Part shown: piece after piece, positions 1,219-20,017 of the stretch
How positions within the stretch are numbered: the stretch's first letter is position 1
Layout of the letters: every line of letters starts with the position of its first letter
IMG/VR virus record: IMGVR_UViG_3300027668_000008
Coordinates: 1 to 64,000 of that record
Direction: 5' to 3' (one strand)
Length of the DNA stretch: 64,000 bases
The notes under the pieces: generated by a model
Seen by the model: only the letters and a program-made list of their open reading frames with translations
Databases searched by the model: none
What the model was told of the DNA's origin: nothing
Position numbers and translations under genes: made by a program

Positions 1219-2523
1219 ATGACGAAACCCAATAAGAAAAGCCCTACACACTGTATGTTACCATGGATTCATTCGCATACTAGTGCTAATGGAACCTTCA
1301 AACCATGTTGTAATGCCATGGGCAGTGATCAACCACTGTGGACCAGTGATGCAAATGATGAAAGCACGTGGTATAAACAGGATCCTAACGCTACTAATGT
1401 AGCAAGAGCCGGCGATAGTATGAGTATAAGACGTAACAACATGACATTAAGTGAGTGGTTCACTAGTGCTTACATGGATAAACTACGCAATGACCTTGCT
1501 AATGGTGTACAAAACCCTATGTGTGGAAGGTGTTGGAGAGATGAAACTCGTAGTGGTACTAGTATAAGACAAAGATATAACAGTAAGTATGAACATCATA
1601 CCACTGTTGAACCCTCAATCTCATACCTAGACCTCAAGTTAACCAACCAATGTAACCTCAAGTGTAGGATGTGTGGCCCAAGTGACAGTAATTTAATAGC
1701 ACAAGACATAGTAGAACTAGAATCCCGGGGGTTGACAGTGCCCGTTAACTATGCTAATGCCTTCGGCCCTAGGAGAAGAAGCCATGCAGATACCAATTAC
1801 ATCGGAGGTTTGCCGGCAAGTACACTAGAAGACATTGAACATCTACTACCACAGTTAACACAACTTAAAGTAACCGGTGGTGAACCAACGCTACAACCAG
1901 AAGTACTACGCTTGTTCGATAGATGTATAGACAACAAGTATGCAGAAAACATTGAACTACACGTTACTACCAATGCTACCAAGTTTACAACAAAGTTTCT
2001 TGAACGTATAGAGCAATTTAAGAACACAAGATTCAATATAAGCGTTGATGGTTATGGTACAACATACAATTACATACGCTATCCCTTTACATGGGACAAG
2101 TTTAATGCTCGTATACAGTTACTAGAAAGTAGATACACTAGTAGTACTACAATACATTGGGCCTATACTTGTGTACCACAGATGTTTAACATAGAGAACA
2201 TACATAAACTACAACAACGAGTAGGGTCAGAACATTTATATGTGAACAATGTGCTACACCCTGACGGTATATACAACAGTTTAGACATAGTACCTGAACA
2301 TATACTAGTATACGCACTAGAGAACATAGAGTATGTTGAAGGTCAAAGTGATATTTTAATTAATTATATTAAAACATTATTAAATGATTATAAGCCCGTG
2401 ACTAAGAGTAGACTAGCAGACATGGTAAAGAGTGTTACTAGTGTAGACATACTACGCAATCAGCACTACAGTGAGTGTTTAGACCCCTTAACAGTGAAGT
2501 TTATAACTGAATCAGCATTGTAG
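1219..2523 (+). CDS. Radical SAM enzyme with N-terminal twitch/SPASM-like domain (class A, #1)
   Basis: N-terminal CMLPW..PCC..CGRC; CNLKCRMC (CxxxCxxC); TGGEP; C-terminal DxxR. Confidence 0.9.
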   Translation: MTKPNKKSPTHCMLPWIHSHTSANGTFKPCCNAMGSDQPLWTSDANDESTWYKQDPNATNVARAGDSMSIRRNNMTLSEWFTSAYMDKLRNDLANGVQNPMCGRCWRDETRSGTSIRQRYNSKYEHHTTVEPSISYLDLKLTNQCNLKCRMCGPSDSNLIAQDIVELESRGLTVPVNYANAFGPRRRSHADTNYIGGLPASTLEDIEHLLPQLTQLKVTGGEPTLQPEVLRLFDRCIDNKYAENIELHVTTNATKFTTKFLERIEQFKNTRFNISVDGYGTTYNYIRYPFTWDKFNARIQLLESRYTSSTTIHWAYTCVPQMFNIENIHKLQQRVGSEHLYVNNVLHPDGIYNSLDIVPEHILVYALENIEYVEGQSDILINYIKTLLNDYKPVTKSRLADMVKSVTSVDILRNQHYSECLDPLTVKFITESAL

Positions 2524-2910
2524 ACGGTTGTAATGGACATACCTTGAGAAACGGAAGCGACAGAAAGGCATACCTCAGCGACTCGAACCGACCTATAAGA
2601 AAAATTCTACACCCTAGATTCACTAGCACTACTAGTGTAATTAAATGAATTTACTTGCTCTTTGGTTGTTTCTCTAGTATAATGAGTACTATAAGCAGTG
2701 CTAAATAGTAGTGCGTATACTAGTTCTATAGTGTGTGCTTTCCCCATGCAAACTTTAACTACTATACAACTGTATACTATAATGTGAATTAAATCATTTA
2801 TTATTTTTAGTTCTCTACTAGTGTAAAACAAACCTGTACTAGTGTAGAACAGAGTAAATAACAATACTATTAGAGTAACAATGCTAACTATCAATTACAA
2901 GAGAACATAG

Positions 2911-4509
2911 ATGTCAAAACTGGACAACCCATACGATAAAACACAATTTACTACTAATCCACTAGAACCTTTAAGTGTACTATCATTAAAAGAACGCAAA
3001 GCAAACAAATGGTTTGATGCTGAAGGCAACACTATGTTTCAATATGAACGTGTTAAACGTTTAGAATTGGAATTCAATAATACTTGTTTCTTATACTGTG
3101 GAGGTTGTGGACGTACATTTAATCCAGAACTAGAGAAAGCAGGTAAGAAACTAATCATGCTTAAAGACGTTAAAAAGTTCTTCCCACCCGAATTTTGTGC
3201 TCAACTGCATTATTTTTTAAGTTGCGGTAACTATGGTGATCCAACAGCACATCCAGAGACACTAGACATACTACGTTGGTTTAGAACAAATGGAACAAAG
3301 AACGTAAGCATAAGTTCAAACGGAGCAAGTCGTAGTCCTGAATGGTGGGCTGAACTGGCTGGCATCATCAATGGAGAAGGTGGAAGCCGTGATGATATTA
3401 AAAACTATTACGGCGGTAGAGTTACCTTTAGCATTGACGGACTAGCAGACACCAACCATTTATACCGTGTGGGTGCAAAATGGGATAGGATAGTGGAAAA
3501 TGTTACTGCGTTTATTAATGCAGGAGGCAGAGCTAGATGGCAATGGATTATGATGAACCATAATGAACACCAATTAGAAGAAGCAAAAGCATGGGCTAAA
3601 GAAATAGGCTTTAGTGAGTTTATAGAAAAGGTTAGTTTTAGATATAACCCCATACGTTTAAGCAAACGTGAAGCAGAGAAACTAGCAGAAGACCAAGAGT
3701 TTGAAATGCTTAAAGACCGTAGTTTAAAGCAGGAGGAACTGCGAAAAGACGTTAGTATGAAATTTGAGCTTACCGACGCTAATGCGGCACTGAGTGCCCG
3801 AGCCGCCAAGCAAGGTGGCACCGAATTGAGCCCAGTTAATGTAAGTGTTAATCCAGAGAATCAACATCCTTATAGAGAAAAGATTAAAGGCATACACGAA
3901 CGTACAAGCAAGACTGCTAAAAAGTTTTGGAGCACTAAACAAAACATTATATGTCAAAACATAGGTGATCCAAGGATATATGTTGATGCAACAGGTAAAG
4001 TATGGCCCTGCAATTGGTTAGGTGGAATAGAGTTTTATGAAAATAAGGACAAGCATTGGCCTCTACCAAGTTATAAGAAGTATGGTATAGATGATCAATG
4101 GAACAGTTTATATAACTTTGCAGACGACGATAATCCAGTTAGAAGCATACTAGAACATCCTTTTTATGAGTATTTGTTAGAAGAAGATTGGAAACATAGT
4201 AGTGAAATGCAACCTGCTAAATGTAAACAAATGTGTCATACAGAGCTAGGTGATGGTATATTTGAAAGTATGAGACGTAATGAACAGAATTTAAAAACTG
4301 GTGAGTATAAAGACATCAGCGAAATACATGATACAGGTATTACTAAAGATGGTGGTCAAGTTGTTATGGCTCCAGAAGGTCAAAAGACTGGACGCTTTAA
4401 ACATCAAGGCGGAACAGGTATTGGTCCTGGCAGTAACAAGGCTGTAGAAGGATTAGATCAAAGCATACTAGATATTGAAACAATAGATGAAGACACCAAC
4501 GAATCATAA
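2911..4509 (+). CDS. Radical SAM enzyme with C-terminal SPASM/twitch domain (class B, #2), with an insertion and a Gly-rich tail
   Basis: CFLYCGGC; GNYGDP in place of GGEP; C-terminal C..VWPC..CKQMC. Confidence 0.9.
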   Translation: MSKLDNPYDKTQFTTNPLEPLSVLSLKERKANKWFDAEGNTMFQYERVKRLELEFNNTCFLYCGGCGRTFNPELEKAGKKLIMLKDVKKFFPPEFCAQLHYFLSCGNYGDPTAHPETLDILRWFRTNGTKNVSISSNGASRSPEWWAELAGIINGEGGSRDDIKNYYGGRVTFSIDGLADTNHLYRVGAKWDRIVENVTAFINAGGRARWQWIMMNHNEHQLEEAKAWAKEIGFSEFIEKVSFRYNPIRLSKREAEKLAEDQEFEMLKDRSLKQEELRKDVSMKFELTDANAALSARAAKQGGTELSPVNVSVNPENQHPYREKIKGIHERTSKTAKKFWSTKQNIICQNIGDPRIYVDATGKVWPCNWLGGIEFYENKDKHWPLPSYKKYGIDDQWNSLYNFADDDNPVRSILEHPFYEYLLEEDWKHSSEMQPAKCKQMCHTELGDGIFESMRRNEQNLKTGEYKDISEIHDTGITKDGGQVVMAPEGQKTGRFKHQGGTGIGPGSNKAVEGLDQSILDIETIDEDTNES

Positions 4510-5797
4510 ACAATTAAAAGGCTTTTGTGTACTGCCTTTTATTCATTTAAGCACACGCACTGATGGTAGTATGCAGATATGCTGTCATGCTAACAGTAGT
4601 AGTACGGAAGATAATAGAAAACCCGGCGTTAATCGTAAAGATGATGGTAGTTTAGTTAATCTAAAGCAGGATAGAGCTGAAGACTATTGGAATACAGAGT
4701 TTATGCGTACTATACGCACAGATATGTTGGCAAATAAGATGCCAAGAGCTTGTTTAACTTGTTATAAAGAAGAAGGATTAGGCTATCGCAGTAAACGTGT
4801 ATGGGAAAACGAAGAGTGGGAAAGGCGTATTGATGTGCCTGCATTATTAAAAGGTGTTGACAATAGTGGAGCAATGAGTTATGGTATACACTATGTTGAT
4901 ATGAAGTTAGGTAATAAATGTGACCTTGCTTGTGTTATGTGCAACCCTGCTGATAGTACACAATGGATACCTGACTATAATAAATTAATTAGCAGTGCTA
5001 GTGATGAATTAAATAAAGAAGTTTATTGGAATAAATCAGAAGCAGGTGGATATAATTGGTGGAAAAATAATAAAACATATTGGACTGACATATATGAGCA
5101 GTTGCATAACCTAAGACATATTTATATTATTGGTGGTGAGCCAACTATTAATAAAGAATTTAAACAGTTCTTACAGTATTGCGTAGATAATAATTATGCA
5201 AAAGGTATTGAATTAAGATTTAATACTAATGGACAAACAATAGATCCTGAATTAAAACAATTATACACAAAATTTAAACATTGTTTAATTCATTTAAGCA
5301 TGGACGGTATATACGAACGTTATGAATATATTCGTTATCCTGGTACATGGGCTAAAGAATTAGAAGTATTAAAGTATTGGGACAATATGCCTGACAACGT
5401 AACAGTTGACATCGACTGTACAGTTAGTGCATTAAACGTTAGCCATATACCAGACTTTGTACGTTGGAAGATGGATCAAGGCTTTAAAAAATTAAATAAA
5501 ACAAGATTCGGTGGCACTATAGGAATGCATTTACTATGGACACCTAACTTCTTAGGCATTAATAATTTAAATGATGAAATAAAAGCCAAAGCAAGTAACG
5601 ATATAGCACAACTACGCATGGAACTTGGCACAACAGTTACAAATAGATATAAAAAATTTGATGCACTATTAAATGCACTAGATAAACCAGCAACAAATAT
5701 AACAGTCTTAGTTGAGTACTTGGACAAAATGGATAAGATAAGAGGAACTTCATGGCAGGATACATTTCCAGAACTAATCAGTTTGCGAAAGAGCTAA
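4487..5797 (+). CDS. Radical SAM enzyme, N-terminal twitch (class A, #3)
   Basis: FCVLPF..ICC..CLTC; CDLACVMC; IGGEP; DKIR. Confidence 0.9.
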   Translation: MKTPTNHKQLKGFCVLPFIHLSTRTDGSMQICCHANSSSTEDNRKPGVNRKDDGSLVNLKQDRAEDYWNTEFMRTIRTDMLANKMPRACLTCYKEEGLGYRSKRVWENEEWERRIDVPALLKGVDNSGAMSYGIHYVDMKLGNKCDLACVMCNPADSTQWIPDYNKLISSASDELNKEVYWNKSEAGGYNWWKNNKTYWTDIYEQLHNLRHIYIIGGEPTINKEFKQFLQYCVDNNYAKGIELRFNTNGQTIDPELKQLYTKFKHCLIHLSMDGIYERYEYIRYPGTWAKELEVLKYWDNMPDNVTVDIDCTVSALNVSHIPDFVRWKMDQGFKKLNKTRFGGTIGMHLLWTPNFLGINNLNDEIKAKASNDIAQLRMELGTTVTNRYKKFDALLNALDKPATNITVLVEYLDKMDKIRGTSWQDTFPELISLRKS

Positions 5798-6726
5798 TAG
5801 AAAAAGAATTAATTAGCCACAAAAAGCACAACGCAATATACGATTACTTTTTTCAAACAACATTAAGGGACGCACCGTGGTATGATTGGTTAGACCAACC
5901 CGGATACTTTGAAGTTGCGGATGAATATAAAGAACGTATGACTGAATGGATTGTTGATAATGATTTTAATACTGTACATGGATTAGATAACTTTAAGCAT
6001 CGCGATTTAATTAATGGAACTACACAAGCATTTGATGAAGCATATTATAGATACAGTGGCAGACGTTTAAGAATATTGCGTGGCGAGTATGCGTATCACA
6101 AACGTGTTGTGTCTGATTATGTTTATTTAGACGAAGTATATTCAGAAGATTTAAGCATGAGCCAATTAGATGGTGATAACCCAATAAAAGAAAACGATTG
6201 GGTAATAATTAGTTTCCCATTTTGTGGAACAGGCGGAACTCCATTAGGATATCATGCAATATTAAATGATTGTTTGTTAAAAAAGGTTCCTGTATTAATA
6301 GATTGTGCTTGGTATGGAACTTGTATGGATCAACATATTGATTTAACACACCCTGCTATCAGTGAAGTAAGTTTTAGTTTAACTAAAAGCACAGGTACAG
6401 GCAACATTAGAAGTGGTGTGCGTTACAGTAATTACGAAGATAACTTACCAATTAGACAACAAAACAATTATAATCATTTAGTATTGGGAGCGGCACAAGT
6501 AGGTATTCATGTAATGAAACATATACCTAGTGACTGGCAAGTAAAGAATTACAGAGATTTTCAAATACAACTATGTCGTAAGTTAAACATTATGCCTAGT
6601 CCATGTATGCATATCGCAATAGCAGATGGTGAAGAAGATTGGCACAAGGACTTCTTAATGGACCAACGACATTACAAAGTTGGCATTAGACAGGCACTTA
6701 AGGCAATGAAGAAGGAACAACTTTAA
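5752..6726 (+). CDS. PLP-dependent fold-type-I enzyme (aminotransferase-like)
   Basis: NGTTQAF phosphate loop, LIDCAW (PLP-binding Asp), FSLTK (Schiff-base Lys). Confidence 0.7.
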   Translation: MAGYISRTNQFAKELIEKELISHKKHNAIYDYFFQTTLRDAPWYDWLDQPGYFEVADEYKERMTEWIVDNDFNTVHGLDNFKHRDLINGTTQAFDEAYYRYSGRRLRILRGEYAYHKRVVSDYVYLDEVYSEDLSMSQLDGDNPIKENDWVIISFPFCGTGGTPLGYHAILNDCLLKKVPVLIDCAWYGTCMDQHIDLTHPAISEVSFSLTKSTGTGNIRSGVRYSNYEDNLPIRQQNNYNHLVLGAAQVGIHVMKHIPSDWQVKNYRDFQIQLCRKLNIMPSPCMHIAIADGEEDWHKDFLMDQRHYKVGIRQALKAMKKEQL

Positions 6727-6986
6727 TGAGTATGATTTCTCCATGTATCAGCATATGTAGATGGGATCCAGTAACCAGTAACTGTTACGGATGTGGTCGT
6801 ACTGTTGCAGAGAAAATGATATGGAAAGACCAGGATACCACAGACGAGTGGAAAGAAAACAATTTAAAAGAGTGCATGGAAAGATTATCAGGGTGGCAAT
6901 TAGAAAGTTTCAAGGAATCATATCAGCATAAGATTAAATACGGTATATCCTTGTTTAAAAAAGAAATGAAGAAGAAACAACTTTAA
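6726..6986 (+). CDS. DUF1289-like small putative Fe-S protein
   Basis: SPCISIC..CYGCGRT..E..W signature. Confidence 0.8.
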   Translation: MSMISPCISICRWDPVTSNCYGCGRTVAEKMIWKDQDTTDEWKENNLKECMERLSGWQLESFKESYQHKIKYGISLFKKEMKKKQL

Positions 6987-7702
6987 TGAGTAACACACCT
7001 AATCCTGTAATTCGAATTATTGGCGATAGTTTTTTTACTAAAACTAAACGTAATTGGCTAGACCGTGCTATAGATCCAACACAGTTTACAATACATAACA
7101 GTGCTAAAGGTGGTACTGGCTTTTGGAGACAGTTAGATCAAGTAAAAGATTTAAAGAACCAAGACTATTATAATAATATTAAATATTGTATAGTAGGGTG
7201 GAGTCATCCATTTAGAATGTATGCTCCAGAGTATATGAGAGACTGGCGTATGAACGATCCAGCACTTTGTGATGAGGAGTTCTTTGGAGTCAAACACGAT
7301 CCTGGACTTAAAGCAAAGCAAGGTACAGTTTCTAATATGATTAAGTATGATTTAATAAATGAAGGTAGAGAATGTACTAAAGCATACGACTTATTACAGT
7401 ATGTTGATGCAGTATTATATCCTAGTATGCCACATATTAAATTCATTAACTTCTTTTGCTTTGACTTTGATTATATAGATGTAACATTAAATGACTTTAA
7501 CTTTAAAAACGCTGTTACAATACATCCAACATTATTTGATATTTGTACTGCTGATGAAAAGGATCCTGATAAAAAGGTAACTCCTATGGACGTTAATAAT
7601 CATTTAAATCATATACAACATAAAGGCATGGCATTAATGTTGGCAAATATAATACGTGATACAGAACAATTCAAACGAGTGAATATTAATAAATGGCTTT
7701 AG
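6986..7702 (+). CDS. SGNH/GDSL hydrolase-like protein
   Basis: IIGDSF block I, AKGG block II, C-terminal DVNNH. Confidence 0.6.
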   Translation: MSNTPNPVIRIIGDSFFTKTKRNWLDRAIDPTQFTIHNSAKGGTGFWRQLDQVKDLKNQDYYNNIKYCIVGWSHPFRMYAPEYMRDWRMNDPALCDEEFFGVKHDPGLKAKQGTVSNMIKYDLINEGRECTKAYDLLQYVDAVLYPSMPHIKFINFFCFDFDYIDVTLNDFNFKNAVTIHPTLFDICTADEKDPDKKVTPMDVNNHLNHIQHKGMALMLANIIRDTEQFKRVNINKWL

Positions 7703-10021: not shown

Positions 10022-10761
10022 TGGAATGGCTTGATATAATAAACAACAGGCACACAACGTTTGCTTGGGAAGAAGATAAGATACCAACAGAGGAAGAACT
10101 TGTGGACGTTCTGCAGGAGGTATTCGCACATATACCATCTAAAAATTTACAGTTTCCTTATCAAGTAAGACTTTTAAGGAATAATGATCCTGCGATAAGC
10201 AAAGAAATAATGACTATTTGTAAACGAAACGAACACAAAACAGATGAAGAAGATCTAGGAAATCCTCAAGTACTTGCTCCGTGGCTTATAGGATTTTGTT
10301 CTAGATATGTAGCAGACTTAGAGTCGAGATACGAATCAGACTCAACAAGAGGCCTAGACACGTTTGAACTTCCGGAAGTAGGCACTAGAGAAAGAAAAGC
10401 AAAAATACAAAATCGTGCTGGTAGTGAACGAGGACAAATGCAAACAGAAAATATTGAAATAGGTATTATGTCTACTTATATTATGTTAGCAATGGCTAAT
10501 AGAGGAATACAAACTGGTATGTGTCAAAACATACAAAGAGATTACACTAGAGCGGAAGAGATATTCGATATCGATAGTGATGTTAAAAACCTAGACTTTA
10601 GATTTATAATGGGAGTTGGGTATGGAAAAGATGCTAGTATAAAGCACGAGTACTTCGATCCTAGAATAGATAAAACAAAACTAATTCCGTTTAAGCCAGT
10701 TAATGTAGAAAAAGTATACCCTCGTCCTGTGTTCGACGATGTAATTAAGGTGGTAAAATAA
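10021..10761 (+). CDS. Nitroreductase-family flavoprotein
   Basis: I.NRHTTFAW (FMN-binding N-terminus), PSKNLQFPY, G..TGMC. Confidence 0.7.
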   Translation: MEWLDIINNRHTTFAWEEDKIPTEEELVDVLQEVFAHIPSKNLQFPYQVRLLRNNDPAISKEIMTICKRNEHKTDEEDLGNPQVLAPWLIGFCSRYVADLESRYESDSTRGLDTFELPEVGTRERKAKIQNRAGSERGQMQTENIEIGIMSTYIMLAMANRGIQTGMCQNIQRDYTRAEEIFDIDSDVKNLDFRFIMGVGYGKDASIKHEYFDPRIDKTKLIPFKPVNVEKVYPRPVFDDVIKVVK

Positions 10762-11918
10762 TGAAAAATACAATTTGTTCAGCACCTTGGCAAGCAACAT
10801 ACTATAAAGAAAGTATGGGCAAATACAAAATGTGTTGTAGTTTTAAAAAATGGACTAAAGCAGAAAGTCCTGAAGATTATTACAACTCGCCAATGGTAGA
10901 ATCTGTTAGGGAGAAAATGCTTAACGGAGAATGGCATGAAGGTTGTACACTTTGTCACAAATTAGAAAACGCGGGTCTTGAAAGTGATAGAGAAACATTT
11001 AATAAACATTTAGAAGTTGACAAATTAGATACAAGTAAGTTTGAACTTAAATGGTTAGATTATAGACCAGGAAACTTATGTAACTTAAAATGTAGAATGT
11101 GTCATTCTAGTAACAGTAGTTTAATCGATAAAGAAACAAAAAAACATCCTGAATTGAAAAAATTTATGGAGACAATACCTGAATACGAATCGGAATTATT
11201 ACCAAGTATTTGCAATGATGAAACCTTTAGAGATTTAGAAGTATTAAAAATATTAGGCGGTGAACCAACTATTGATCCACAAGTACAAAAATTACTAGAG
11301 TGGACAATTAGTAATGGATACGCAAAGAATATTAATTTGCGTTACACAACAAATGCAACAAACATAAATGAAAATTGGATTAAAGCAGTTAAACAATTTA
11401 AAACAACAAAGATTCAATTAAGTTTAGATGGCACAGGCAAAACATACGACTATATTAGAACAGGCGCCAATTGGCATAAAATTAAAGAAAATATTATGTT
11501 AATGCCTAAAAAGATTAATAACATTAGAAACATTGGTTCTAATATTGTGTTTAGTGTCTATGACTGTTTTACTATTGATCAGTGGTATCCAGAGTTGTTA
11601 GAAATAAAAGAAACTATGCAACGAGAATATGGTATAGACATTAACTTTAATATTATTGATTGTACTTGGCCCACTTATCAAATGGTATCTAATTTACCTG
11701 AGGAATACAAACAAATTGTAGTAGACAAAATCGATAGTATGCCAATGGATAAAGTTTTAAAAGCAGTTAGACATCACACTACTAAAAAAGCAAAAGGCAT
11801 ACCAGAAAAAGAAGTTGCTATGTTCTTTGAACATAACGATATGCTAGATAGAATTAGAAAAACAAATATCAATGATATAAGCGAACACTATGAAACACTT
11901 CGACAGAACACATTATAA
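10761..11918 (+). CDS. Radical SAM enzyme, N-terminal twitch (class A, #6)
   Basis: ICSAPW..MCC..CTLC; CNLKCRMC; LGGEP; DRIR. Confidence 0.9.
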   Translation: MKNTICSAPWQATYYKESMGKYKMCCSFKKWTKAESPEDYYNSPMVESVREKMLNGEWHEGCTLCHKLENAGLESDRETFNKHLEVDKLDTSKFELKWLDYRPGNLCNLKCRMCHSSNSSLIDKETKKHPELKKFMETIPEYESELLPSICNDETFRDLEVLKILGGEPTIDPQVQKLLEWTISNGYAKNINLRYTTNATNINENWIKAVKQFKTTKIQLSLDGTGKTYDYIRTGANWHKIKENIMLMPKKINNIRNIGSNIVFSVYDCFTIDQWYPELLEIKETMQREYGIDINFNIIDCTWPTYQMVSNLPEEYKQIVVDKIDSMPMDKVLKAVRHHTTKKAKGIPEKEVAMFFEHNDMLDRIRKTNINDISEHYETLRQNTL

Positions 11919-13401
11919 AGATCCAGAACATTACGAACAGAGTATAAAAGATAAAGGTTGTTCAGGCTTTTGTCCTATACCCTGGGTTAGTCTAGGAGTT
12001 AATAACAACGGTGACTATCGTATGTGTGTTCAAGCCGCGGCTAATAGAAAAAATAACATCAGAGGACAATGTAAAGGCCCTGACGGTGTTACTATGCGTA
12101 TCGAAGACACTAGCATTGCCGATAGTCGTAACAGCGAAGTAATGAAAGAAACAAGACGTGATATGATTGCAGGCAAGAGAAGTGATCATTGCGTTCGTTG
12201 TAACAGAGAAGATGATGCTGGTAGTAACAGCCGACGTTGGCTTGACTTAAAGAAGTATTGGCAAGAGTTTGACATCGACGATGCAATAGAGAATACAGCC
12301 AAAGATGGTAGCATAGACACAGAGGAATATCCATTATTAGACTTAGACTTACGTTTAGATAACACTTGTAACTTGAAGTGTCGTATGTGTGGGCCTACTG
12401 AGAGTCATCAATGGTACACTGAATGGATGAAGACAACAGGATACAAAAAGTTTAAAGCGTATGACCACACTGTTAATTTAGAAATGCAAGGTAGCCGAGC
12501 TAAAATAGTTGGTAAGAGTCCATATGGCTGGAGCGACAGAATCGATGTTGCAGAGATACTTCAGAAAGATGCACCTCACTTAAAACAAATATATATGAGT
12601 GGAGGCGAACCTTTAATCATTAATCAACAGTACGAAGTATTACAACAGTATATCGATAATGGTACTGCAAAAGACTTAGAGATCGATTACAATACAAACT
12701 TTACAAGTATTCCACAACGTGCATTAGATCAATGGAAACACTTTAGACAGGTTAACATTGGTGGAAGTGTAGACGGTATCGATAAAGTAAACGACTACGT
12801 TAGGTATCCAAGTAAGTGGACACAGATAAAAGAGAACATAACAAAATTAGATACCCAAACAGAAGATAATGTAACGTGTTGGTTAACATACACCTGGCAA
12901 ATATTAAATGTGTTAAGTGTTACAGACATTATAGAGTATTGTTTAGAGCAAGACTTTGTTAAGTTTAATCGATATAGTCAAAGTGCTTTCTTTACATATC
13001 ACCCTGTGCATAATCCTGCATATTATTGTGTAACTAGTCTGCCAGACCCTGCAAAAGAGTATGTAACAAAGTATATAACTGATTGGATGAATGGTTGGTT
13101 TAAAGAATGGTGTGATAGTAAGCCTAGAGACTATAAAATGTCTAACAGTAATTATGAAATGAGAAACCATGGTAAGATTACAAGAGATTGGGACAATGGC
13201 CCTGATGCTTTATATGAAATCACTTGCAAACAATTGAATAGTATGTTACAATTTATGAATGCACGAAGTACAGTAGAGGAACTACCTGAAATGTGGAGAC
13301 GTACACGCATTTTAGATGAAAGTAGAGGAGAAAACTTTGAAGAAGTTTATCCTGAACTTGCAGTTCATATTAAAAAACACTTAGGCATTAGTAATGATTA
13401 A
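11890..13401 (+). CDS. Radical SAM enzyme, N-terminal twitch (class A, #7)
   Basis: FCPIPW..MC..CVRC; CNLKCRMC; SGGEP; DESR. Confidence 0.9.
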   Translation: MKHFDRTHYKDPEHYEQSIKDKGCSGFCPIPWVSLGVNNNGDYRMCVQAAANRKNNIRGQCKGPDGVTMRIEDTSIADSRNSEVMKETRRDMIAGKRSDHCVRCNREDDAGSNSRRWLDLKKYWQEFDIDDAIENTAKDGSIDTEEYPLLDLDLRLDNTCNLKCRMCGPTESHQWYTEWMKTTGYKKFKAYDHTVNLEMQGSRAKIVGKSPYGWSDRIDVAEILQKDAPHLKQIYMSGGEPLIINQQYEVLQQYIDNGTAKDLEIDYNTNFTSIPQRALDQWKHFRQVNIGGSVDGIDKVNDYVRYPSKWTQIKENITKLDTQTEDNVTCWLTYTWQILNVLSVTDIIEYCLEQDFVKFNRYSQSAFFTYHPVHNPAYYCVTSLPDPAKEYVTKYITDWMNGWFKEWCDSKPRDYKMSNSNYEMRNHGKITRDWDNGPDALYEITCKQLNSMLQFMNARSTVEELPEMWRRTRILDESRGENFEEVYPELAVHIKKHLGISND

Positions 13402-14488
13402 ATTACAAGATTTAGAATCAATACAATTAGAAATTACAAGTAATTGTAATGCCATGTGTTTAGATTGTGCTAGAAACATTGATGGAGTAAAACTTAATCC
13501 ATATGTAGAGTTTGGTAAAGCAGGAAACATGAGCTTTGAATTATTTAAAAGTATACTTAACAAAAAGACATTACCTAACTTTAAGAAGTTAGAACTAGAT
13601 GGTAACTTTGGTGATAGTTTAATACACCCACAGAGTTACGAGTTTATGGAATACTATTGTAATGAGTTTCCAGGAACTAATATCGAGATTAATTCTAATG
13701 GATCTTATAATGACACAGACTGGTGGTATAAGTTAGGAAAGTTATTATCCACACATCTTAATAGGAGACCGGAGCATATTAAGTTTGGTATAGATGGAGT
13801 AGACTTTGAAACACACGGAATATATAGACGTAACTTAGATTACAATAAAATTATAGATAACGCAACAGCATTTATGGCAGGTGGAGGTGTTGCTACATGG
13901 AAGTTTTTAGAGTTCGACCATAATACACATCAAGTTGAACAAGCAAGACAACTAGCAAAAGAATTAGGATTTCAAAGATTTTATTTGAAAGCAACAAGGA
14001 ATAAAACAAGAGTAATTGAAGAAACTTTAGATAATAAATCTTATAAGGTAACTGGACAAGCAACAAAGAAAAAAGAACATATTGAAATAGATTCAATGGA
14101 TAAGGCTACAAGAAATGTTTTAGAAACTCATATAAAAAGTATTGTAAGTGATACTGAAAACTTTTATGATACAAGTACAGTCCGTTGTCCATGGCAAAGA
14201 CGTAAGATGATACAAATAGACTACGATGGTAGAATATATCAATGTTGTCATATTGGTGGAAAATATGGTAGAACAAAGAACTTTAAACATAAAGAGTATC
14301 AATATTACATTGACAAATATGGCATCGATTGGAATAACTTAAATATACATACAATACAAGAAGTTTTTGATCATCCATACTGGAAAGACCTCGACGAAAG
14401 TTTTAACAACAGTATACATGATAAATCAAATCCAAGAATTAAAAGATGCGTTGAAAAATGTTCAGCGGAATTATGGAGTAATGCATGA
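13394..14488 (+). CDS. Radical SAM enzyme, C-terminal SPASM (class B, #8)
   Basis: CNAMCLDC; GNFGDS; CPW..YQCC..CVEKC. Confidence 0.9.
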   Translation: MIKLQDLESIQLEITSNCNAMCLDCARNIDGVKLNPYVEFGKAGNMSFELFKSILNKKTLPNFKKLELDGNFGDSLIHPQSYEFMEYYCNEFPGTNIEINSNGSYNDTDWWYKLGKLLSTHLNRRPEHIKFGIDGVDFETHGIYRRNLDYNKIIDNATAFMAGGGVATWKFLEFDHNTHQVEQARQLAKELGFQRFYLKATRNKTRVIEETLDNKSYKVTGQATKKKEHIEIDSMDKATRNVLETHIKSIVSDTENFYDTSTVRCPWQRRKMIQIDYDGRIYQCCHIGGKYGRTKNFKHKEYQYYIDKYGIDWNNLNIHTIQEVFDHPYWKDLDESFNNSIHDKSNPRIKRCVEKCSAELWSNA

Positions 14489-15813
14489 GTAAAACATTTT
14501 GTCCAATACCTTGGAACTTTCAGGCTATTAGAAATAATGGCGACATTCGTATTTGCTGTCAAGCAAACGTAACAAAGAATCAAGGTGTAGTTAGACATAA
14601 AGACGGCACTCCGTATAATGCAGGTAAGCATAGTATGAAGCAGGCTCGTAATGCAGACTTAATGAAAGCAGTTCGAAAGAATATGCTTGAAGGTAAGTGG
14701 AGCGACGAATGTACTCGTTGTAAGCAAGAAGAAGACGTAGGACTTAACAGTAGACGTCAATACGAATTGCAAACATGGAAAGAATTTGATATACGACAAG
14801 CACAAGTGTTGACATCAGAAGATGGAACTATTGATACTAGCAATTCTCCTGTTGTTTATTATGATTTACGGTTTGGTAACTTATGCAATCTACAATGTAG
14901 AATGTGTGGACCAACAGATAGTCATAGTTGGTATGAACAGTGGACAGACTATCATAAAGAAGATGGCTTCCAAGACACACATGGTTATGTTAAACTTGAA
15001 CGTAATGCAAAAGGTAGGCTAGACACTGATGATTATAGTTGGCATGGCTCTACTAGTTTTTGGAATAACATTGAAAAGAATTTAGATAATATTCGACACG
15101 TTTATATGGCAGGCGGCGAACCTATGATGATCGAAAGACATTACGAGTTCCTAGAGAAGTGTGTAAAGAAAGGTGTTGCTAAGAATATATTAATTGAATA
15201 CAATACTAACATGACAGCATTGCCTGATAGAGTATTAGAGTATTGGAAACATTTTAAAGAAGTAAGAGTTGGTGCTAGTATAGATGGTATGGGCAAAGTA
15301 CTAGAGTATCAACGTTATCCAATTAAATGGGAACAAGCAAAGAAGAATTTAGATAAGTTAGATAAGTTCTGCCAAGAGAACAGCAACGTAATGGCATGGA
15401 TCGCTTATACAGTAACAGTAAACAATATATGGCACTTGCCGGAGTTTATGTTATGGAAAGTTAATGCTAGTGGGTGGAAGAAGATTAATAGTACATTAAA
15501 GAGACCTGTTATAACTCACCATGTTGCACATGGACCCAGACGTGCTAACATTAGGTTACTTCCTGAGGATATGAAAGACGAATTAGAATTATTTTATACA
15601 GGTTGGAAGAAGATTTTCGAAGGAGAGTTTACTGATTTACAGACAGAAAAGGCTTGCAAAATACTAGATAGTGTGTTACAATATTGTAAATCAGAAGATT
15701 ACTCTGATGCATTACCTGAGTTTAAGAAGTTTACAAAGTATTTAGACATATCAAGAAACCAAAGTATACTCGATGTTGCTCCTAGATACAAACGATTGTT
15801 CGACAATGATTAA
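14485..15813 (+). CDS. Radical SAM enzyme, N-terminal twitch (class A, #9)
   Basis: FCPIPW..ICC..CTRC; CNLQCRMC; AGGEP; DISR. Confidence 0.9.
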   Translation: MSKTFCPIPWNFQAIRNNGDIRICCQANVTKNQGVVRHKDGTPYNAGKHSMKQARNADLMKAVRKNMLEGKWSDECTRCKQEEDVGLNSRRQYELQTWKEFDIRQAQVLTSEDGTIDTSNSPVVYYDLRFGNLCNLQCRMCGPTDSHSWYEQWTDYHKEDGFQDTHGYVKLERNAKGRLDTDDYSWHGSTSFWNNIEKNLDNIRHVYMAGGEPMMIERHYEFLEKCVKKGVAKNILIEYNTNMTALPDRVLEYWKHFKEVRVGASIDGMGKVLEYQRYPIKWEQAKKNLDKLDKFCQENSNVMAWIAYTVTVNNIWHLPEFMLWKVNASGWKKINSTLKRPVITHHVAHGPRRANIRLLPEDMKDELELFYTGWKKIFEGEFTDLQTEKACKILDSVLQYCKSEDYSDALPEFKKFTKYLDISRNQSILDVAPRYKRLFDND

Positions 15814-16525
15814 AGAAGGATACGAAGGACTTAACAATTCAGTATATTTGGAAGGTGGGTTTAGAATACAAATAGAATCCAGCACAAGATGTAACTGCTT
15901 ATGTCCTGGTTGCTCTAGAACAAAGACTAAAGCAAAGTATGATGCAGGTGAGAGTGAACTTATGTATCCTATTATGGATATGAGTTTAGATAATTTTAAA
16001 CTGTTAGTTCGTCCTGAGAATAATATTAAACGTATAACATATAGTCTTACATTAGGAGATCCTATATACAGTGGATCGTTTTTAGAACAAGTGCATTACT
16101 TAAATACTTTAGATAAACGTCCTTGGATTAATTTACATACTAACGGCAGTGGTCGTTCTAAAGATTGGTGGAGTAAACTAGGTAAACTACTACGAGGTAG
16201 AGATAGAGTTGAGTTTACTATTGATGGACTAGAAGATACAAATAAGATTTATAGAATTAACTCAAAGTGGAATACAGTTATAGATGGCTTTAAGGCTTTA
16301 AAGACGAGTATAAATGAAATAGATAGTGATGCTGAAGTAGATGTAAGACATCTTATATTCGAACACAACTATCACCAAACACTAGATGTTTGTAAACTCG
16401 CACAAGACTTAAAGGCAAACACGTTGCGTATATTTGTTGGAGATGGCAGAACACCAGAACATATGAGATTAAAGAGTAAACAGTGGAACGACATTAAAGG
16501 AGAGATAGATGCCTATTTACCCTAA
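15806..16525 (+). CDS. Radical SAM core only (class B, #10; SPASM domain in the next ORF)
   Basis: CNCLCPGC; TLGDP; FTIDG. Likely ATG at 15806, overlapping the previous stop (the track starts at 15773). Confidence 0.85.
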   Translation: MIKEGYEGLNNSVYLEGGFRIQIESSTRCNCLCPGCSRTKTKAKYDAGESELMYPIMDMSLDNFKLLVRPENNIKRITYSLTLGDPIYSGSFLEQVHYLNTLDKRPWINLHTNGSGRSKDWWSKLGKLLRGRDRVEFTIDGLEDTNKIYRINSKWNTVIDGFKALKTSINEIDSDAEVDVRHLIFEHNYHQTLDVCKLAQDLKANTLRIFVGDGRTPEHMRLKSKQWNDIKGEIDAYLP

Positions 16526-16859
16526 ATGTAAATACAGAGATGACCAGCCACCTATCCTAAGAGTAGATGGATATGTTGGACCTTGTTGTCACTTCGGCGG
16601 CGAGTCTCCGTGGTTCGACTTAAAAAATTTACTTGGAGATAAAATAGAACAACTGCATATCTCAAACGGCACAATGGATGAAATTAATCGTAGTGAAGCA
16701 AGTTACATGATAGAACAAAGTTTTACAGATGCTCCAATGGATAGTTGTAAACAAATGTGTGGCAAACCGTTCTTACAAACAAGTAAGGAAGGCGGCTTCT
16801 CTACAGCAAACGACAGAGTAATGATTAAAAACTTAATAAAAAGTAGATTAGATGACTGA
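16509..16859 (+). CDS. Stand-alone SPASM/twitch Fe-S domain protein
   Basis: CKY..RVDGYVGPCCHF..CKQMC matches the C-termini of the class B enzymes; AAGGAG RBS upstream. Confidence 0.8.
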   Translation: MPIYPKCKYRDDQPPILRVDGYVGPCCHFGGESPWFDLKNLLGDKIEQLHISNGTMDEINRSEASYMIEQSFTDAPMDSCKQMCGKPFLQTSKEGGFSTANDRVMIKNLIKSRLDD

Positions 16860-17958
16860 TTTAAAAACAAGTGAATATGACTTTAGTGCTATACCCTTTG
16901 ACGATTTAGTTAGTGTTGGGCAACGTACTTTACTTCATAGAGATATTTTTACAGTTAGTTGGCTACTAGGAAGATTTTGTAACTACAAATGTTCTTATTG
17001 TTGGCCCTATGCTCGTAGTGATAGAAAAGACCATAGACCTACGGAACTATGTCTATCAACTATTGACGAAATTAAGAGACAGGCAAGAGACAATGGCTTT
17101 AATAGTTTTCATTTTAGTTTAAGTGGAGGCGAGCCAACTTTTCATCCTGGTTACTTAGATATTTTAAAACATTTAAGTGACGATGCTCACAATACAAACT
17201 ACACAAGTGTACACATGACTAGTAATTGTAGTCGTAACATGAAGTGGTTTGAAACGTATGTCGATTACGCAAGTAAGTTTCACCGTGCTAGTATTACTTG
17301 TAGTCTACACGTTGAACACGTCGACACACCTGAGAAAATGCAGGACCTTGCAAACAAACTTATACTATGTCAAGAACATGATGTACAAGTAACTATTAAT
17401 ATGGTTATGGTTCCAGAAGTATTTGACAAGTATTATGAGAATGCATTGTTCTTTCATAATCAGAACATTAACGTAACTTTAAAGCCTATGAGTGATCCAA
17501 CTGCAAGTAGAGTCGTTGATGGTTATACAGAGGAAATGAAGCAAAAACTGTATAATGATATGCCACAACGTGCATATACTGAGATTAAAAATAAATACGT
17601 TAGTAGACCAAAGCCCAATTGGAAGCCTTTACCAGAAATGAAATTGGACAATGGAACAGTACCTCAGCATTTTCAAGTAGAGTTTGAAGATAATAAAGGC
17701 AAGAAATGGTACATGGATCAAGCAGAACGCTTTAATGCGTTTAATTTTAATAAATTTACTGGTTGGCAATGCAATGCAGGGTTCCAAGGAATTATAATAA
17801 GAGAACCAGACGGCTCAATTAAGAGAAGTTATAGTTGCAGTGACAGTCCACTAGGAAATATCGAAACAGGGTTTAAGTTATTTAATAAACCGATGCCTTG
17901 TATTTCAAACTCGTGTGTATCTAGTGCAGACAGTAAGATTCCAAAAAGGAAAGAATGA
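16852..17958 (+). CDS. Radical SAM enzyme with C-terminal Cys cluster (third type, #11)
   Basis: CNYKCSYC; SGGEP; WQCNAG..SYSC..C..SCVS. Confidence 0.9.
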   Translation: MTDLKTSEYDFSAIPFDDLVSVGQRTLLHRDIFTVSWLLGRFCNYKCSYCWPYARSDRKDHRPTELCLSTIDEIKRQARDNGFNSFHFSLSGGEPTFHPGYLDILKHLSDDAHNTNYTSVHMTSNCSRNMKWFETYVDYASKFHRASITCSLHVEHVDTPEKMQDLANKLILCQEHDVQVTINMVMVPEVFDKYYENALFFHNQNINVTLKPMSDPTASRVVDGYTEEMKQKLYNDMPQRAYTEIKNKYVSRPKPNWKPLPEMKLDNGTVPQHFQVEFEDNKGKKWYMDQAERFNAFNFNKFTGWQCNAGFQGIIIREPDGSIKRSYSCSDSPLGNIETGFKLFNKPMPCISNSCVSSADSKIPKRKE

Positions 17959-20005: not shown

Positions 20006-20017
20006 AAAGAGTGACGA

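What the first reader, a model, noticed from the sequence alone, without database searches (positions are those of the whole stretch)
1219..17958. Phage-encoded array of 11 tandem radical-SAM/SPASM-twitch enzymes with no known product
Seen: 11 CxxxCxxC enzymes in 16.7 kb, ten of them in one run of overlapping or abutting ORFs, all with auxiliary Cys clusters. They are interleaved only with a PLP enzyme, a DUF1289-like Fe-S protein, an SGNH hydrolase and a nitroreductase. Established: SPASM/twitch radical SAM enzymes typically install post-translational modifications on peptides or proteins (thioether and C-C crosslinks, formylglycine in anSME) or modify sugars (BtrN). Inference: a large viral biosynthetic assembly line, for example for hypermodifying virion proteins or a surface glycan, or for making a RiPP-like metabolite. 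The paralogs are highly diverged yet all keep their cluster ligands, which suggests distinct substrates or steps rather than decay. This is the strongest candidate for an undescribed system in the window.
Basis: partly seen in the sequence, partly recalled or inferred. Interest (0 to 1): 0.92.

Follow-up and report, generated by a model that had tools for sequence, protein, structure and literature searches.

The report
Phage radical-SAM enzyme array, product unknown
A marine T4-like phage carries a working operon of 11 radical-SAM enzymes plus helper genes; such arrays were already reported in other phages, the product is still unknown, and the same gene kit turns up in predatory Bdellovibrio-type bacteria and in a cultured SAR11 phage where it could be tested.

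Summary
Eleven + strand ORFs between 1219 and 17958 carry CX3CX2C, and no other ORF of at least 150 aa in the window does.

They fall into three families:
- Six N-terminal-twitch enzymes (NCBIfam NF033640).
- Four enzymes with a C-terminal twitch-like Cys domain. One of these is split into two genes, 15773 and 16509, and the split is conserved.
- One highly conserved "anchor" enzyme (16852).

Helpers are a fold-type-I PLP enzyme, a DUF1289 protein, a nitroreductase-like protein, and NifU, SufE and IscU. A perfect sigma-70 consensus promoter lies 32 nt upstream of the first gene. All genes are under purifying selection (dN/dS 0.05-0.39).

The array is not unique. More than 564 IMG/VR contigs carry the anchor gene, with a median of 7 radical-SAM genes per 21 kb. 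Published T4-like phages (CP220, a Tara genome, pelagimyophages) have 11-12 such genes with no assigned function.

New here:
- The closest cellular homologues are almost all in Bdellovibrionota, in similar clusters.
- Cultured Pelagibacter phage Mosig carries a smaller version next to nucleotide-sugar enzymes.

No precursor peptide, RRE domain, protease or exporter was found, so a RiPP role is unlikely. My best guess, at about 0.4, is stepwise radical tailoring of a sugar or nucleotide-sugar type substrate. The product remains unknown.

The parts
1160..1187 (+). Perfect sigma-70 consensus promoter (TTGACA-N16-TATAAT), 32 nt before the first ATG of the array
   Evidence: The window holds nine perfect matches against 0.11 expected, all co-oriented with the genes. 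This is the only one on the + strand.
1219..2523 (+). Group A radical SAM, N-terminal twitch (434 aa)
   Evidence: NF033640 267 bits (cutoff 170); Pfam Radical_SAM 49.5 bits. Cys 12/30/31/102/105 followed by C145-x3-C-x2-C.
2911..4509 (+). Group B radical SAM with C-terminal Cys domain and a long C-terminal tail (532 aa)
   Evidence: CX3CX2C at residue 59. phrog_21308 E 8e-16. 25-27% identical to 7693, 13394 and 15773. Pfam Radical_SAM is below its cutoff at 20 bits. The ortholog in L001 is 80% identical.
4487..5797 (+). Group A radical SAM, N-terminal twitch (436 aa)
   Evidence: NF033640 354 bits. Pfam SPASM hit on residues 14-93, 21.6 bits. Its subclade is shared with Bdellovibrionota (SH-aLRT 99).
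5752..6726 (+). Fold-type-I PLP-dependent enzyme with no Pfam family (324 aa)
   Evidence: AF2 pLDDT 86.7. Best Foldseek hits are CobD Thr-phosphate decarboxylase and aminotransferases, E 1.6e-10. K212, D184, S209 and R220 are invariant (A2). Homologues occur in 10 cellular loci, 24 viral loci and Mosig_00079.
6726..6986 (+). DUF1289 small Cys-rich protein (86 aa)
   Evidence: Pfam PF06945, 41.6 bits against a cutoff of 27.
6986..7702 (+).
   Evidence: No Pfam, NCBIfam, PHROG or PDB match. Only a GDS tripeptide near the N-terminus. 52% identical ortholog in L085.
7693..8766 (+). Group B radical SAM with C-terminal twitch-like domain (357 aa)
   Evidence: Pfam Radical_SAM 32.5 bits. phrog_21308 E 5.5e-25. 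Cys 256/277/278/348/352. 28% identical to Campylobacter phage CP220 and 24% to Pelagibacter phage Mosig.
8756..10021 (+). Group A radical SAM, N-terminal twitch (421 aa, TTG start)
   Evidence: NF033640 241 bits. No Pfam hit.
10021..10761 (+). Nitroreductase-like flavoprotein (246 aa)
   Evidence: Pfam PF00881 16.9 bits, below its cutoff. Aligns over about 200 residues (query 6-206) with the nitroreductase-family protein of L005, E 6e-7. The family recurs in 32 of 80 viral loci.
10761..11918 (+). Group A radical SAM, N-terminal twitch (385 aa)
   Evidence: NF033640 275 bits; Pfam 41.3 bits.
11890..13401 (+). Group A radical SAM, N-terminal twitch (503 aa)
   Evidence: NF033640 330 bits; Pfam 31.4 bits.
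13394..14488 (+). Group B radical SAM with C-terminal twitch-like domain (364 aa)
   Evidence: 36% identical to 7693. Cys 265/284/285/352/356. Weak SPASM and Radical_SAM hits.
14485..15813 (+). Group A radical SAM, N-terminal twitch (442 aa); the best-conserved group A member
   Evidence: NF033640 367 bits. More than 1350 homologues, the listed ones at 62-99% identity. Up to 51% identical to Bdellovibrionota proteins.
15773..16525 (+). Catalytic part of a split group B radical SAM (250 aa)
   Evidence: Pfam 37.4 bits. Aligns to the N-terminal two thirds of 7693 and 13394 (A3).
16509..16859 (+). Separate twitch-like Cys subunit of the split group B enzyme (116 aa)
   Evidence: Cys 7/26/27/80/84 align with the C-terminal Cys domain of group B (A3). 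The split is conserved in L085, L086 and L117 and in cultured phage Mosig.
16852..17958 (+). Group C 'anchor' radical SAM (368 aa)
   Evidence: Pfam 50.2 bits. C43/47/50 and C307/350/355 invariant, C329 in 93% (A4). 73-100% identical in the 80 viral contigs kept out of more than 564 relatives. 55-62% identical in Bdellovibrionota. AF2 pLDDT 85.8; nearest folds are anSME, viperin and MoaA.
18100..18468 (+). NifU-like Fe-S scaffold or carrier domain protein
   Evidence: Pfam PF01106, 78 bits.
18449..18850 (+). SufE sulfur-transfer protein
   Evidence: Pfam PF02657, 95.5 bits.
18907..21434 (+). Conserved downstream module: unknown 198-aa protein, DUF6356 protein, cold-shock protein, 236-aa AMP-binding fragment, unknown 239-aa protein
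   Evidence: Syntenic in L001, L085, L086 and L138. dN/dS 0.05-0.21.
22646..23062 (-). IscU-type Fe-S scaffold on the opposite strand just past the operon
   Evidence: The sequence (viral family 37, seen as L084:15795-16211) carries the IscU hallmark motifs by eye. No profile search was run on it.

Best explanation
What it is. This is a functional operon of a marine T4-like phage. It is probably transcribed early by host RNA polymerase from a perfect sigma-70 consensus promoter. It encodes 11 radical-SAM enzymes of three families:
- Six with an N-terminal one-cluster 'twitch' domain (NF033640).
- Four with the same kind of domain at the C-terminus, one of them split into a catalytic gene and a separate Cys-domain gene.
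- One highly conserved anchor enzyme at the 3' end.

What accompanies it. The helpers are a PLP enzyme, a nitroreductase-like flavoprotein and a small DUF1289 Cys protein. The phage also brings its own Fe-S assembly helpers (NifU, SufE, IscU), which would load the roughly 22 [4Fe-4S] clusters that the enzymes need.

How it most likely works (inferred, not shown). The enzymes carry out a series of radical tailoring steps on a non-peptide substrate. The steps would be H-atom abstraction followed by dehydrogenation, epimerisation, dehydration or C-C bond formation, with the fully Cys-ligated auxiliary cluster acting as an electron relay as in BtrN and anSME. The PLP enzyme would add transamination or decarboxylation, and the flavoprotein would add redox steps. 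The substrate is most probably a sugar or nucleotide-sugar that ends up in a glycan.

How it evolves. The set of group A and B enzymes is shuffled like cassettes between related phages while the anchor enzyme stays. That fits diversification of a surface or recognition-related structure. The same kit is shared, by several transfers, with Bdellovibrionota.

Confidence. The figure of 0.4 refers to the sugar-type substrate. That this is a real, functional radical-SAM operon is close to certain.
For: Shown:
- The 11 motif-bearing ORFs and their family assignments.
- Purifying selection on every gene, dN/dS 0.05-0.39.
- A perfect promoter at 1160-1187, one of nine in the window against 0.11 expected.
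- NifU, SufE and IscU next to the array.
- Cassette-like variation around a constant anchor gene. In 80 viral loci there are 267 group A, 95 group B and 125 group C genes, with a median of 7 and a maximum of 13 radical-SAM ORFs per 21 kb.
- 65 of the 75 best cellular loci are Bdellovibrionota, with the same A, B, C and PLP families clustered together.
- Phage and bacterial sequences are interleaved in orthologous subclades.

For a sugar-type substrate (indirect):
- In isolate Bdellovibrio sp. HCB2-146 the genes sit among two UDP-Glc/GDP-Man dehydrogenases, two epimerase/dehydratases, a DegT aminotransferase and a polysaccharide lyase.
- GT2 or carbamoyltransferase genes lie nearby in further cellular loci; 21 of 75 have at least one glycan-type gene.
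- Cultured Pelagibacter phage Mosig has the split group B enzyme, the same PLP family and nitroreductase-like proteins. They sit beside an ArnB-like aminotransferase, a carbamoyltransferase, an epimerase and tail fibres.
- In CP220, five tandem radical-SAM genes are followed by two nucleotide-diphospho-sugar-transferase-fold proteins and a PAP2 phosphatase.
- Pelagimyophage radical-SAM cassettes lie in the host-recognition cluster with glycosyltransferases (PMC7029224).

Against a peptide substrate: no RRE, precursor, protease or exporter.
Against: - The window has no glycosyltransferase or nucleotide-sugar gene.
- Only 3 of 89 viral loci have one within 10 kb of the anchor gene.
- 21 of 75 cellular loci may be little above what chance gives for 20-kb bacterial neighbourhoods; I did not compute a background rate.
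- In at least one Bdellovibrionia locus the neighbours are unannotated ORFs and a seryl-tRNA synthetase, with no glycan genes.
- The fold and profile matches (anSME, viperin, MoaA, SkfB, GDGT-MAS) are generic and do not point to a substrate.
- Other recurrent neighbours would also fit lipid, nucleotide or amino-acid chemistry: a QueC-like PP-loop ATPase, Asp/Arg-hydroxylase-like and TauD oxygenases, a fatty-acid-desaturase-like protein and the AMP-binding fragment.
- Early expression is inferred from a promoter match only.
Confidence: 0.4

Rival explanations
1. RiPP or protein maturation. The enzymes would install crosslinks, epimerisations or formylglycine-type changes on a ribosomal peptide or on phage or host proteins.
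For: SPASM/twitch radical-SAM enzymes are best known as peptide maturases. Weak core-only NCBIfam matches to PapB, ScmF, HxsC and CcpM. The profile of group A matches SkfB at E 9e-8, and anSME is the best fold match for group C. Nitroreductase-like and Asp/Arg-hydroxylase-like neighbours also occur in RiPP clusters.
Against: All of those matches are 10- to 20-fold below the family cutoffs. None of the 11 enzymes has an RRE/PqqD domain. No conserved small ORF looks like a precursor: the 76-aa ORF in L001 is a 2-TM membrane protein, and the intergenic ORFs are not conserved. There is no protease or exporter in the window. An early-type promoter fits poorly with modification of late virion proteins.
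Confidence: 0.2
2. Nucleotide or DNA hypermodification. The array would make modified nucleotides, or exotic sugars attached to phage DNA, to evade host defences.
For: This is a T4-like phage with an early-type promoter. ThyX is nearby, and relatives also have SHMT. QueC-like PP-loop ATPases are in 40 of 80 viral loci. Viperin and MoaA, which act on nucleotides, are among the best fold matches for group C. CP220, which is rich in radical-SAM genes, fully replaces dG by a 7-deazaguanine (bioRxiv 10.1101/2023.04.13.536721).
Against: None of the enzymes reaches the QueE, viperin or MoaA cutoffs. The window has no DpdA-like enzyme, hydroxymethylase or DNA glycosyltransferase that I could recognise. 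Known DNA hypermodification pathways use one or two radical-SAM enzymes, not eleven. The Bdellovibrionota homologues sit in ordinary chromosomal loci, some of them with glycan genes.
Confidence: 0.15
3. Lipid or envelope-lipid tailoring, for example C-C or C-H chemistry on acyl chains or lipid A.
For: The profile of group A matches GDGT-MAS and Tes weakly. Fatty-acid-desaturase-like proteins are in 24 of 89 viral loci and Asp/Arg-hydroxylase (LpxO family) proteins in 35. The operon holds an AMP-binding fragment. Patatin, thiolase and SDR genes occur in cellular loci.
Against: The matches are weak and core-only. None of the radical-SAM enzymes looks membrane-bound by eye. The neighbours named are common in marine phage hypervariable regions whether or not radical-SAM genes are present (PMC7029224).
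Confidence: 0.1
4. Generic metabolic boost. The phage would simply supplement host Fe-S or anaerobic-type enzymes. Alternatively, the array is decaying paralogous baggage.
For: Earlier papers proposed this reading (PMC2853527, PMC5332604). Fe-S assembly genes accompany the array.
Against: The enzymes belong to families with no housekeeping equivalog. All are intact and under purifying selection. Subfamilies are conserved across phages and Bdellovibrionota.
Confidence: 0.05

Closest known systems
Radical-SAM-rich modules of Campylobacter T4-like phages CP220 and CPt10 (Timms 2010, PMC2853527)
   Same: T4-like myovirus with 11-12 radical-SAM genes, partly in tandem interchangeable modules. Group B enzyme 7693 is 28% identical to a CP220 protein. 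Function unknown.
   Different: No group A or group C homologue turned up in cultured phages at the thresholds used. CP220 modules carry an amidinotransferase, GT-A-fold proteins and PAP2, which this window lacks. The host and habitat also differ.
Radical-SAM cassettes of marine T4-like genomes: Tara genome TARA_ERS488813_N000010 (12 radical-SAM genes, PMC5332604), pelagimyophage host-recognition clusters (PMC7029224) and cultured Pelagibacter phage Mosig EXVC030M
   Same: Marine T4-like phages. Fe-S assembly genes sit beside many radical-SAM genes. Gene content varies like cassettes. Mosig shares the split group B enzyme, the PLP family and nitroreductase-like proteins.
   Different: This phage's DNA polymerase is closest to the jumbo phages Phosso and Atu_ph07 at 45-49% identity. 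Here the array sits next to replication and nucleotide genes rather than tail fibres. Mosig has only about three radical-SAM genes and does have nucleotide-sugar enzymes.
NCBIfam NF033640, N-terminal twitch radical SAM proteins
   Same: Six of the enzymes score 241-367 bits against a cutoff of 170 and keep the N-terminal Cys set.
   Different: No member of the family is characterised, as far as the literature searches showed. Membership therefore gives no function.
Twitch and SPASM dehydrogenases BtrN and anSME
   Same: A radical-SAM core plus an auxiliary [4Fe-4S] cluster that appears fully ligated by Cys. anSME is the best fold match of group C.
   Different: Sequence scores are far below the family cutoffs (TIGR03942 gives 30 bits against 349). 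The domain order is permuted in group A. There is only one auxiliary cluster, against two in anSME.

Membership tests
Radical SAM superfamily (PF04055) | CX3CX2C motif that binds the SAM-cleaving [4Fe-4S] cluster | tested here: met
   All 11 ORFs have it. The three Cys are invariant in the group A and group C alignments.
Radical SAM superfamily (PF04055) | Profile score at or above the Pfam gathering cutoff (29.5 bits) | tested here: met
   Met by 8 of the 11. ORFs 2911 (20.0 bits) and 13394 (19.0 bits) are below it. ORF 8756 has no Pfam hit but is covered by NF033640 at 241 bits. The three are tied to the others by paralogy.
Radical SAM superfamily (PF04055) | GGE SAM-binding motif | tested here: met
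   Invariant G210-G211-E212 in group A and G92-G93-E94 in group C.
NF033640 N_Twi_rSAM | Whole-protein score of at least 170 bits | tested here: met
   ORFs 1219, 4487, 8756, 10761, 11890 and 14485 score 241-367 bits. The other five score 27-44 bits or have no NF033640 hit and are not members.
NF033640 N_Twi_rSAM | Twitch-like Cys cluster placed N-terminal to the CX3CX2C motif | tested here: met
   C6, C24, C76 and C79 (numbering of 14485) are invariant and lie before C134. A Pfam SPASM hit covers residues 14-93 of 4487.
SPASM domain (PF13186 / TIGR04085; two auxiliary clusters) | Seven-Cys motif able to bind two auxiliary [4Fe-4S] clusters | tested here: not met
   Only 4-5 conserved extra Cys per enzyme. 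Pfam SPASM scores are at or below the cutoff (21.6, 18.1 and 16.9 bits against 21.5). This fits the shorter twitch form.
RiPP biosynthetic cluster with radical-SAM maturase | Precursor peptide gene in or beside the cluster | tested here: not met
   No conserved small ORF with precursor features in the window, in L001 or L164, or in 80 viral loci.
RiPP biosynthetic cluster with radical-SAM maturase | RRE (PqqD-like) recognition domain, leader protease or exporter | tested here: not met
   No such Pfam or NCBIfam hit on any protein of the region.
Anaerobic sulfatase maturase / BtrN / MoaA / viperin / QueE equivalogs | Score at or above the NCBIfam equivalog cutoff | tested here: not met
   The best scores are 15-48 bits against cutoffs of 180-650.
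Radical-SAM-rich islands of T4-like phages (CP220, Tara genome, pelagimyophages) | T4-like phage backbone | tested here: met
   DNA polymerase matches phrog_262 at E 3.5e-193. Related loci carry T4 gp13 and gp15. An IMG/VR contig is 100% identical over the compared locus.
Radical-SAM-rich islands of T4-like phages (CP220, Tara genome, pelagimyophages) | About ten or more radical-SAM genes, clustered and variable between relatives | tested here: met
   Eleven here. Median 7 and maximum 13 per 21 kb in 46 related loci. Content differs between close relatives.
Radical-SAM-rich islands of T4-like phages (CP220, Tara genome, pelagimyophages) | Homology of the enzymes themselves to those of the published phages | tested here: inconclusive
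   Group B is 24-28% identical to proteins of CP220 and Mosig over about half its length. Groups A and C have no match in cultured phages. The Tara genome itself was not compared.
Glycan or nucleotide-sugar tailoring locus | Glycosyltransferase or nucleotide-sugar enzymes in the same cluster | tested here: not met
   None in the window. They are present only in related loci: L043, Mosig, CP220 and 21 of 75 cellular loci.

The most novel reading that the evidence does not exclude
The array could be a combinatorial, cassette-shuffled radical-SAM pathway for a new class of non-peptide molecule. The candidate is an exotic sugar or nucleotide derivative. The pathway would be shared essentially only by marine T4-like phages and predatory Bdellovibrionota, two agents that kill Gram-negative cells from the inside. 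Both would use it during takeover, for example to mark or protect their own envelope or DNA, or to remodel the victim's surface.
Probability: 0.15. Interest if true: 0.85.

Novelty: new member of a known kind. Interest (0 to 1): 0.6.

Why it matters
Radical-SAM arrays in T4-like phages have been an unexplained oddity since 2010, and they turn out to be common in the ocean. More than 564 viral contigs carry the anchor enzyme. The N-terminal-twitch family alone has about 6,100 clusters at 50% identity (E up to 1e-30) in 1.8 billion proteins, and I found no characterised member.

Three concrete handles now make the question testable:
- A constant anchor enzyme that usually sits with a conserved group A partner.
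- A cultured SAR11 phage (Mosig) that carries a small version of the system.
- A cultured Bdellovibrio isolate with the genes inside a polysaccharide locus.

If the product is a surface or DNA decoration, it would bear on host range and superinfection in the most abundant marine bacteria. If it is a small molecule, it opens new radical enzymology.

Tried and rejected
Searches that found nothing:
- Nucleotide search of the region in cultured phages: no match.
- Group C protein in cultured phages: no match.
- PDB sequence searches for 5752, 6986, 10021 and 14485: nothing useful.
- Rfam on window 1-22000, including the 388-nt gap: no family, so no SAM riboswitch.
- tRNA scan of the window: none.
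- T4 late-promoter motif TATAAATA: fewer copies than chance expects.
- Literature search for 'N-terminal twitch': nothing. The search for 'twitch domain-containing radical SAM' returned only unrelated papers.
- The Bdellovibrio plus radical SAM paper search gave nothing relevant.

Searches that were uninformative:
- Foldseek of the group C model gave only generic radical-SAM neighbours.

Ideas considered and dropped:
- That 16509 is a frameshift artefact. Rejected, because the two-gene split is conserved in four other phages.
- That the Bdellovibrionota hits are binned phage contigs. Rejected for the Mb-scale contigs and the isolate. Probably true for L025, and suspected but not checked for L050 and L055.

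Full report
**Observation.** ORF listing and a motif scan show eleven + strand ORFs with CX3CX2C between 1219 and 17958. They are the only ones among the 58 ORFs of at least 150 aa in the window. From 2911 to 17958 every ORF overlaps or abuts the next, and ORF 1219 lies 388 nt upstream. Pfam Radical_SAM passes its cutoff for eight of them. ORFs 2911 and 13394 fall below it, and 8756 has no Pfam hit but is a clear NF033640 member.

**The genome is a phage.** The window holds a T4-type DNA polymerase (phrog_262, E 3.5e-193). Its best cultured relatives are the jumbo phages Phosso and Atu_ph07 at 45-49% identity. IMG/VR contig IMGVR_UViG_3300027704_000009 (136,449 bp) is 100% identical over the compared locus, and the window starts about 300 bases into that contig.

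**Three enzyme families.** All-against-all comparison splits the eleven into three groups.
- *Group A* (1219, 4487, 8756, 10761, 11890, 14485). Members are 23-34% identical to each other. All pass NCBIfam NF033640, 'twitch domain-containing radical SAM protein', at 241-367 bits against a cutoff of 170. Four Cys are invariant before the CX3CX2C motif (C6, C24, C76, C79 in 14485), and the GGE motif is invariant.
- *Group B* (2911, 7693, 13394, 15773). Members are 24-36% identical. They match phrog_21308 and carry a C-terminal C-x18-20-CC ... C-x3-C domain. ORF 15773 stops before that domain. The next ORF, 16509-16859 (116 aa, Cys 7/26/27/80/84), aligns to it.
- *The split in group B.* The same split is present in relatives L085, L086 and L117. 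It is also present in cultured Pelagibacter phage Mosig, as Mosig_00084 plus Mosig_00085. It is therefore a genuine two-subunit arrangement, not an assembly frameshift.
- *Group C* (16852). It has C43/47/50 and C307, C350, C355 invariant, and C329 in 93% of 41 homologues.

None of the groups has the seven-Cys pattern of a full SPASM domain. They are twitch-type, with one auxiliary cluster.

**Helper genes.**
- The 324-aa protein 5752-6726 has no Pfam family. Its predicted structure is confident (pLDDT 86.7) and matches fold-type-I PLP enzymes (CobD, aminotransferases; E 1.6e-10). Lys212, Asp184, Ser209 and Arg220 are invariant in 12 homologues.
- ORF 6726 is DUF1289.
- ORF 10021 is nitroreductase-like. 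Pfam scores it below cutoff, but it aligns over about 200 residues (query 6-206) with the nitroreductase-family protein of locus L005.
- ORF 6986 has no recognisable family, so the SGNH call is unverified.
- Downstream lie NifU, SufE, an unknown protein, DUF6356, a cold-shock protein, a 236-aa AMP-binding fragment and another unknown protein. An IscU-type gene sits on the other strand at 22646-23062.

**Expression signal.** A perfect TTGACA-N16-TATAAT lies at 1160-1187, 32 nt before the first ATG. The window has nine perfect sites against 0.11 expected, each pointing along its genes, and this is the only one on the + strand. By analogy with T4 early promoters, I infer early transcription by host polymerase. 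This is an inference, not a measurement. The T4 late motif is not enriched.

**Selection.** Against orthologs in L086, L085 and L001, every gene of the region gives dN/dS of 0.05-0.39. The anchor gene is lowest, at 0.05. dS is often near saturation, but the two least diverged genes (dS about 0.24-0.28) give 0.09 and 0.18. Decay is excluded.

**Distribution in phages.**
- ORF 14485 has more than 1350 homologues, the listed ones at 62-99% identity, many from Tara and other marine assemblies.
- Neighbourhoods L001-L008 show the same kind of array. One group is syntenic with the window, including NifU, SufE and the AMP-binding fragment. Another sits beside T4 gp13 and gp15.
- In the closest syntenic relative the array continues upstream with further radical-SAM genes, so the window's contig end probably truncates it.
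- The anchor gene is found in more than 564 IMG/VR contigs; the best 80 are 73-100% identical.
- In 80 such loci I counted 267 group A genes, 95 group B and 125 group C. The loci also hold 40 nitroreductase-like, 25 PLP and 52 QueC-like PP-loop ATPase genes, plus Asp/Arg-hydroxylase-like, TauD, fatty-acid-desaturase-like and further large radical-SAM genes; a B12-binding radical-SAM family recurs in 17 of 89 viral loci.
- The median is 7 radical-SAM ORFs per 21 kb and the maximum 13.
- Close relatives differ in which group A and B genes they hold, while the anchor stays in place.

**Prior literature.**
- CP220 and CPt10 have 11 and 12 radical-SAM proteins, which the authors called highly unusual, with an interchangeable five-gene module (PMC2853527).
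- A 183-kb T4-like Tara genome has 12, along with Fe-S assembly genes (PMC5332604).
- Pelagimyophage host-recognition clusters differ by radical-SAM cassettes and hold glycosyltransferases (PMC7029224).

None of these papers assigns a function. The array as a phenomenon is therefore known, and its product is not.

**Cellular relatives.**
- A scan of one genome per species returned 75 loci. Sixty-five are Bdellovibrionota, including Mb-scale contigs and the isolate Bdellovibrio sp. HCB2-146, with up to 51% identity to 14485.
- These loci also hold group B, group C (55-62% identical to 16852) and the PLP family.
- In a tree of group A, phage and bacterial sequences interleave within supported subclades. 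The paralogues therefore diverged before several transfers.
- At least one 'MAG' hit (L025) has the same length as an IMG/VR contig and is likely a binned phage contig.
- A profile of group A finds 6,099 clusters at 50% identity at E up to 1e-30, some of them fused tandem copies.

**What does it make?**
- *Peptide substrate.* I found no RRE, precursor, protease or exporter.
- *Fold and profile matches.* They are generic: anSME, viperin, MoaA, SkfB and GDGT-MAS.
- *Context favouring sugar chemistry.*
  - In HCB2-146 the genes lie among UDP-Glc/GDP-Man dehydrogenases, epimerase/dehydratases, a DegT aminotransferase and a polysaccharide lyase.
  - GT2 and carbamoyltransferase genes recur in other cellular loci.
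  - Phage Mosig places its split group B enzyme, the same PLP family and nitroreductase-like genes beside an ArnB-like aminotransferase, a carbamoyltransferase, an epimerase and tail fibres.
  - The CP220 module is followed by two GT-A-fold proteins and a PAP2 phosphatase.
- *Context against it.*
  - The window has no such gene.
  - Only 3 of 89 viral loci have one nearby.
  - The 21 of 75 cellular loci were not compared with a background rate.
  - One Bdellovibrionia locus has only unannotated neighbours.

I therefore put sugar or nucleotide-sugar tailoring first at about 0.4. The rivals are peptide or protein modification at 0.2, nucleotide or DNA modification at 0.15, lipid chemistry at 0.1 and a generic metabolic boost at 0.05.

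**Verdict.** The finding is a new member of a known but functionally unexplained kind of phage gene island. Its value lies in the testable handles found here rather than in the array's existence.

Noticed in passing
window 761-788(-), 992-1019(-), 1118-1146(-), 1160-1187(+), 25149-25176(-), 30845-30872(-), 37865-37893(-), 44886-44913(-), 50625-50653(-): Nine perfect TTGACA-N16-18-TATAAT promoters against 0.11 expected. All point along their genes, and four are packed into the 430-bp divergent region upstream of the array. They are likely the phage's early promoter set.
   Followed up: partly
window 15773-16525 and 16509-16859; L167:8962-9928: A radical-SAM enzyme is split into a catalytic gene and a separate twitch-type Cys-domain gene. 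The split is conserved across several uncultured phages and in cultured Pelagibacter phage Mosig. In other viral loci (L149-L151) a 154-aa Cys-rich ORF sits just before the anchor gene.
   Followed up: yes
window 18100-18850(+) and 22646-23062(-): Three Fe-S assembly genes (NifU-like, SufE, IscU-type) flank the 3' end of the array.
   Followed up: partly
window 20018-20728: An AMP-binding (adenylate-forming) fragment of only 236 aa. It is conserved at 61-70% identity in relatives with dN/dS about 0.15-0.18, so it is a functional short form rather than a broken gene.
   Followed up: partly
window about 2575-2685; L164 about 9665-9775: A conserved block lies in the 388-nt gap between the first and second radical-SAM genes (AACCGACC ... 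AGAAAAATTCTrCACCC). It is followed by a conserved promoter-like TTGnnn-17-TATAAT. No Rfam or tRNA hit.
   Followed up: partly
window 19796-20005; 24443-25111(-); 22146-22622(-): A cold-shock-domain protein sits inside the operon. ThyX and a DUF2721 membrane protein lie on the opposite strand.
   Followed up: no
window 27496-28803(-), 29283-30398(-), 41035-44034(-), 55515-58172(-): An HNH-endonuclease-like protein (phrog_1314), an ATPase (phrog_1297), a 999-aa protease-like protein and the T4-type DNA polymerase. The polymerase is closest to the jumbo phages Phosso and Atu_ph07.
   Followed up: no
This is probably a phage contig binned into a bacterial MAG. L050 and L055 ('Gammaproteobacteria MED685') may be the same kind of case.
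   Followed up: partly
proteins P0121-P0126 and others: Some members of the N-terminal-twitch family are 800-1400 aa long with two or three full copies fused in tandem.
   Followed up: no
L011:13428-15598, L012:16581-18721: Bdellovibrionota loci carry three tandem copies of a QueC-like PP-loop ATPase. The same family is found in 40 of 80 viral loci.
   Followed up: no
L164:4735-6408(-): In the closest syntenic relative, a 557-aa DNA polymerase III alpha fragment sits between two blocks of radical-SAM genes.
   Followed up: no
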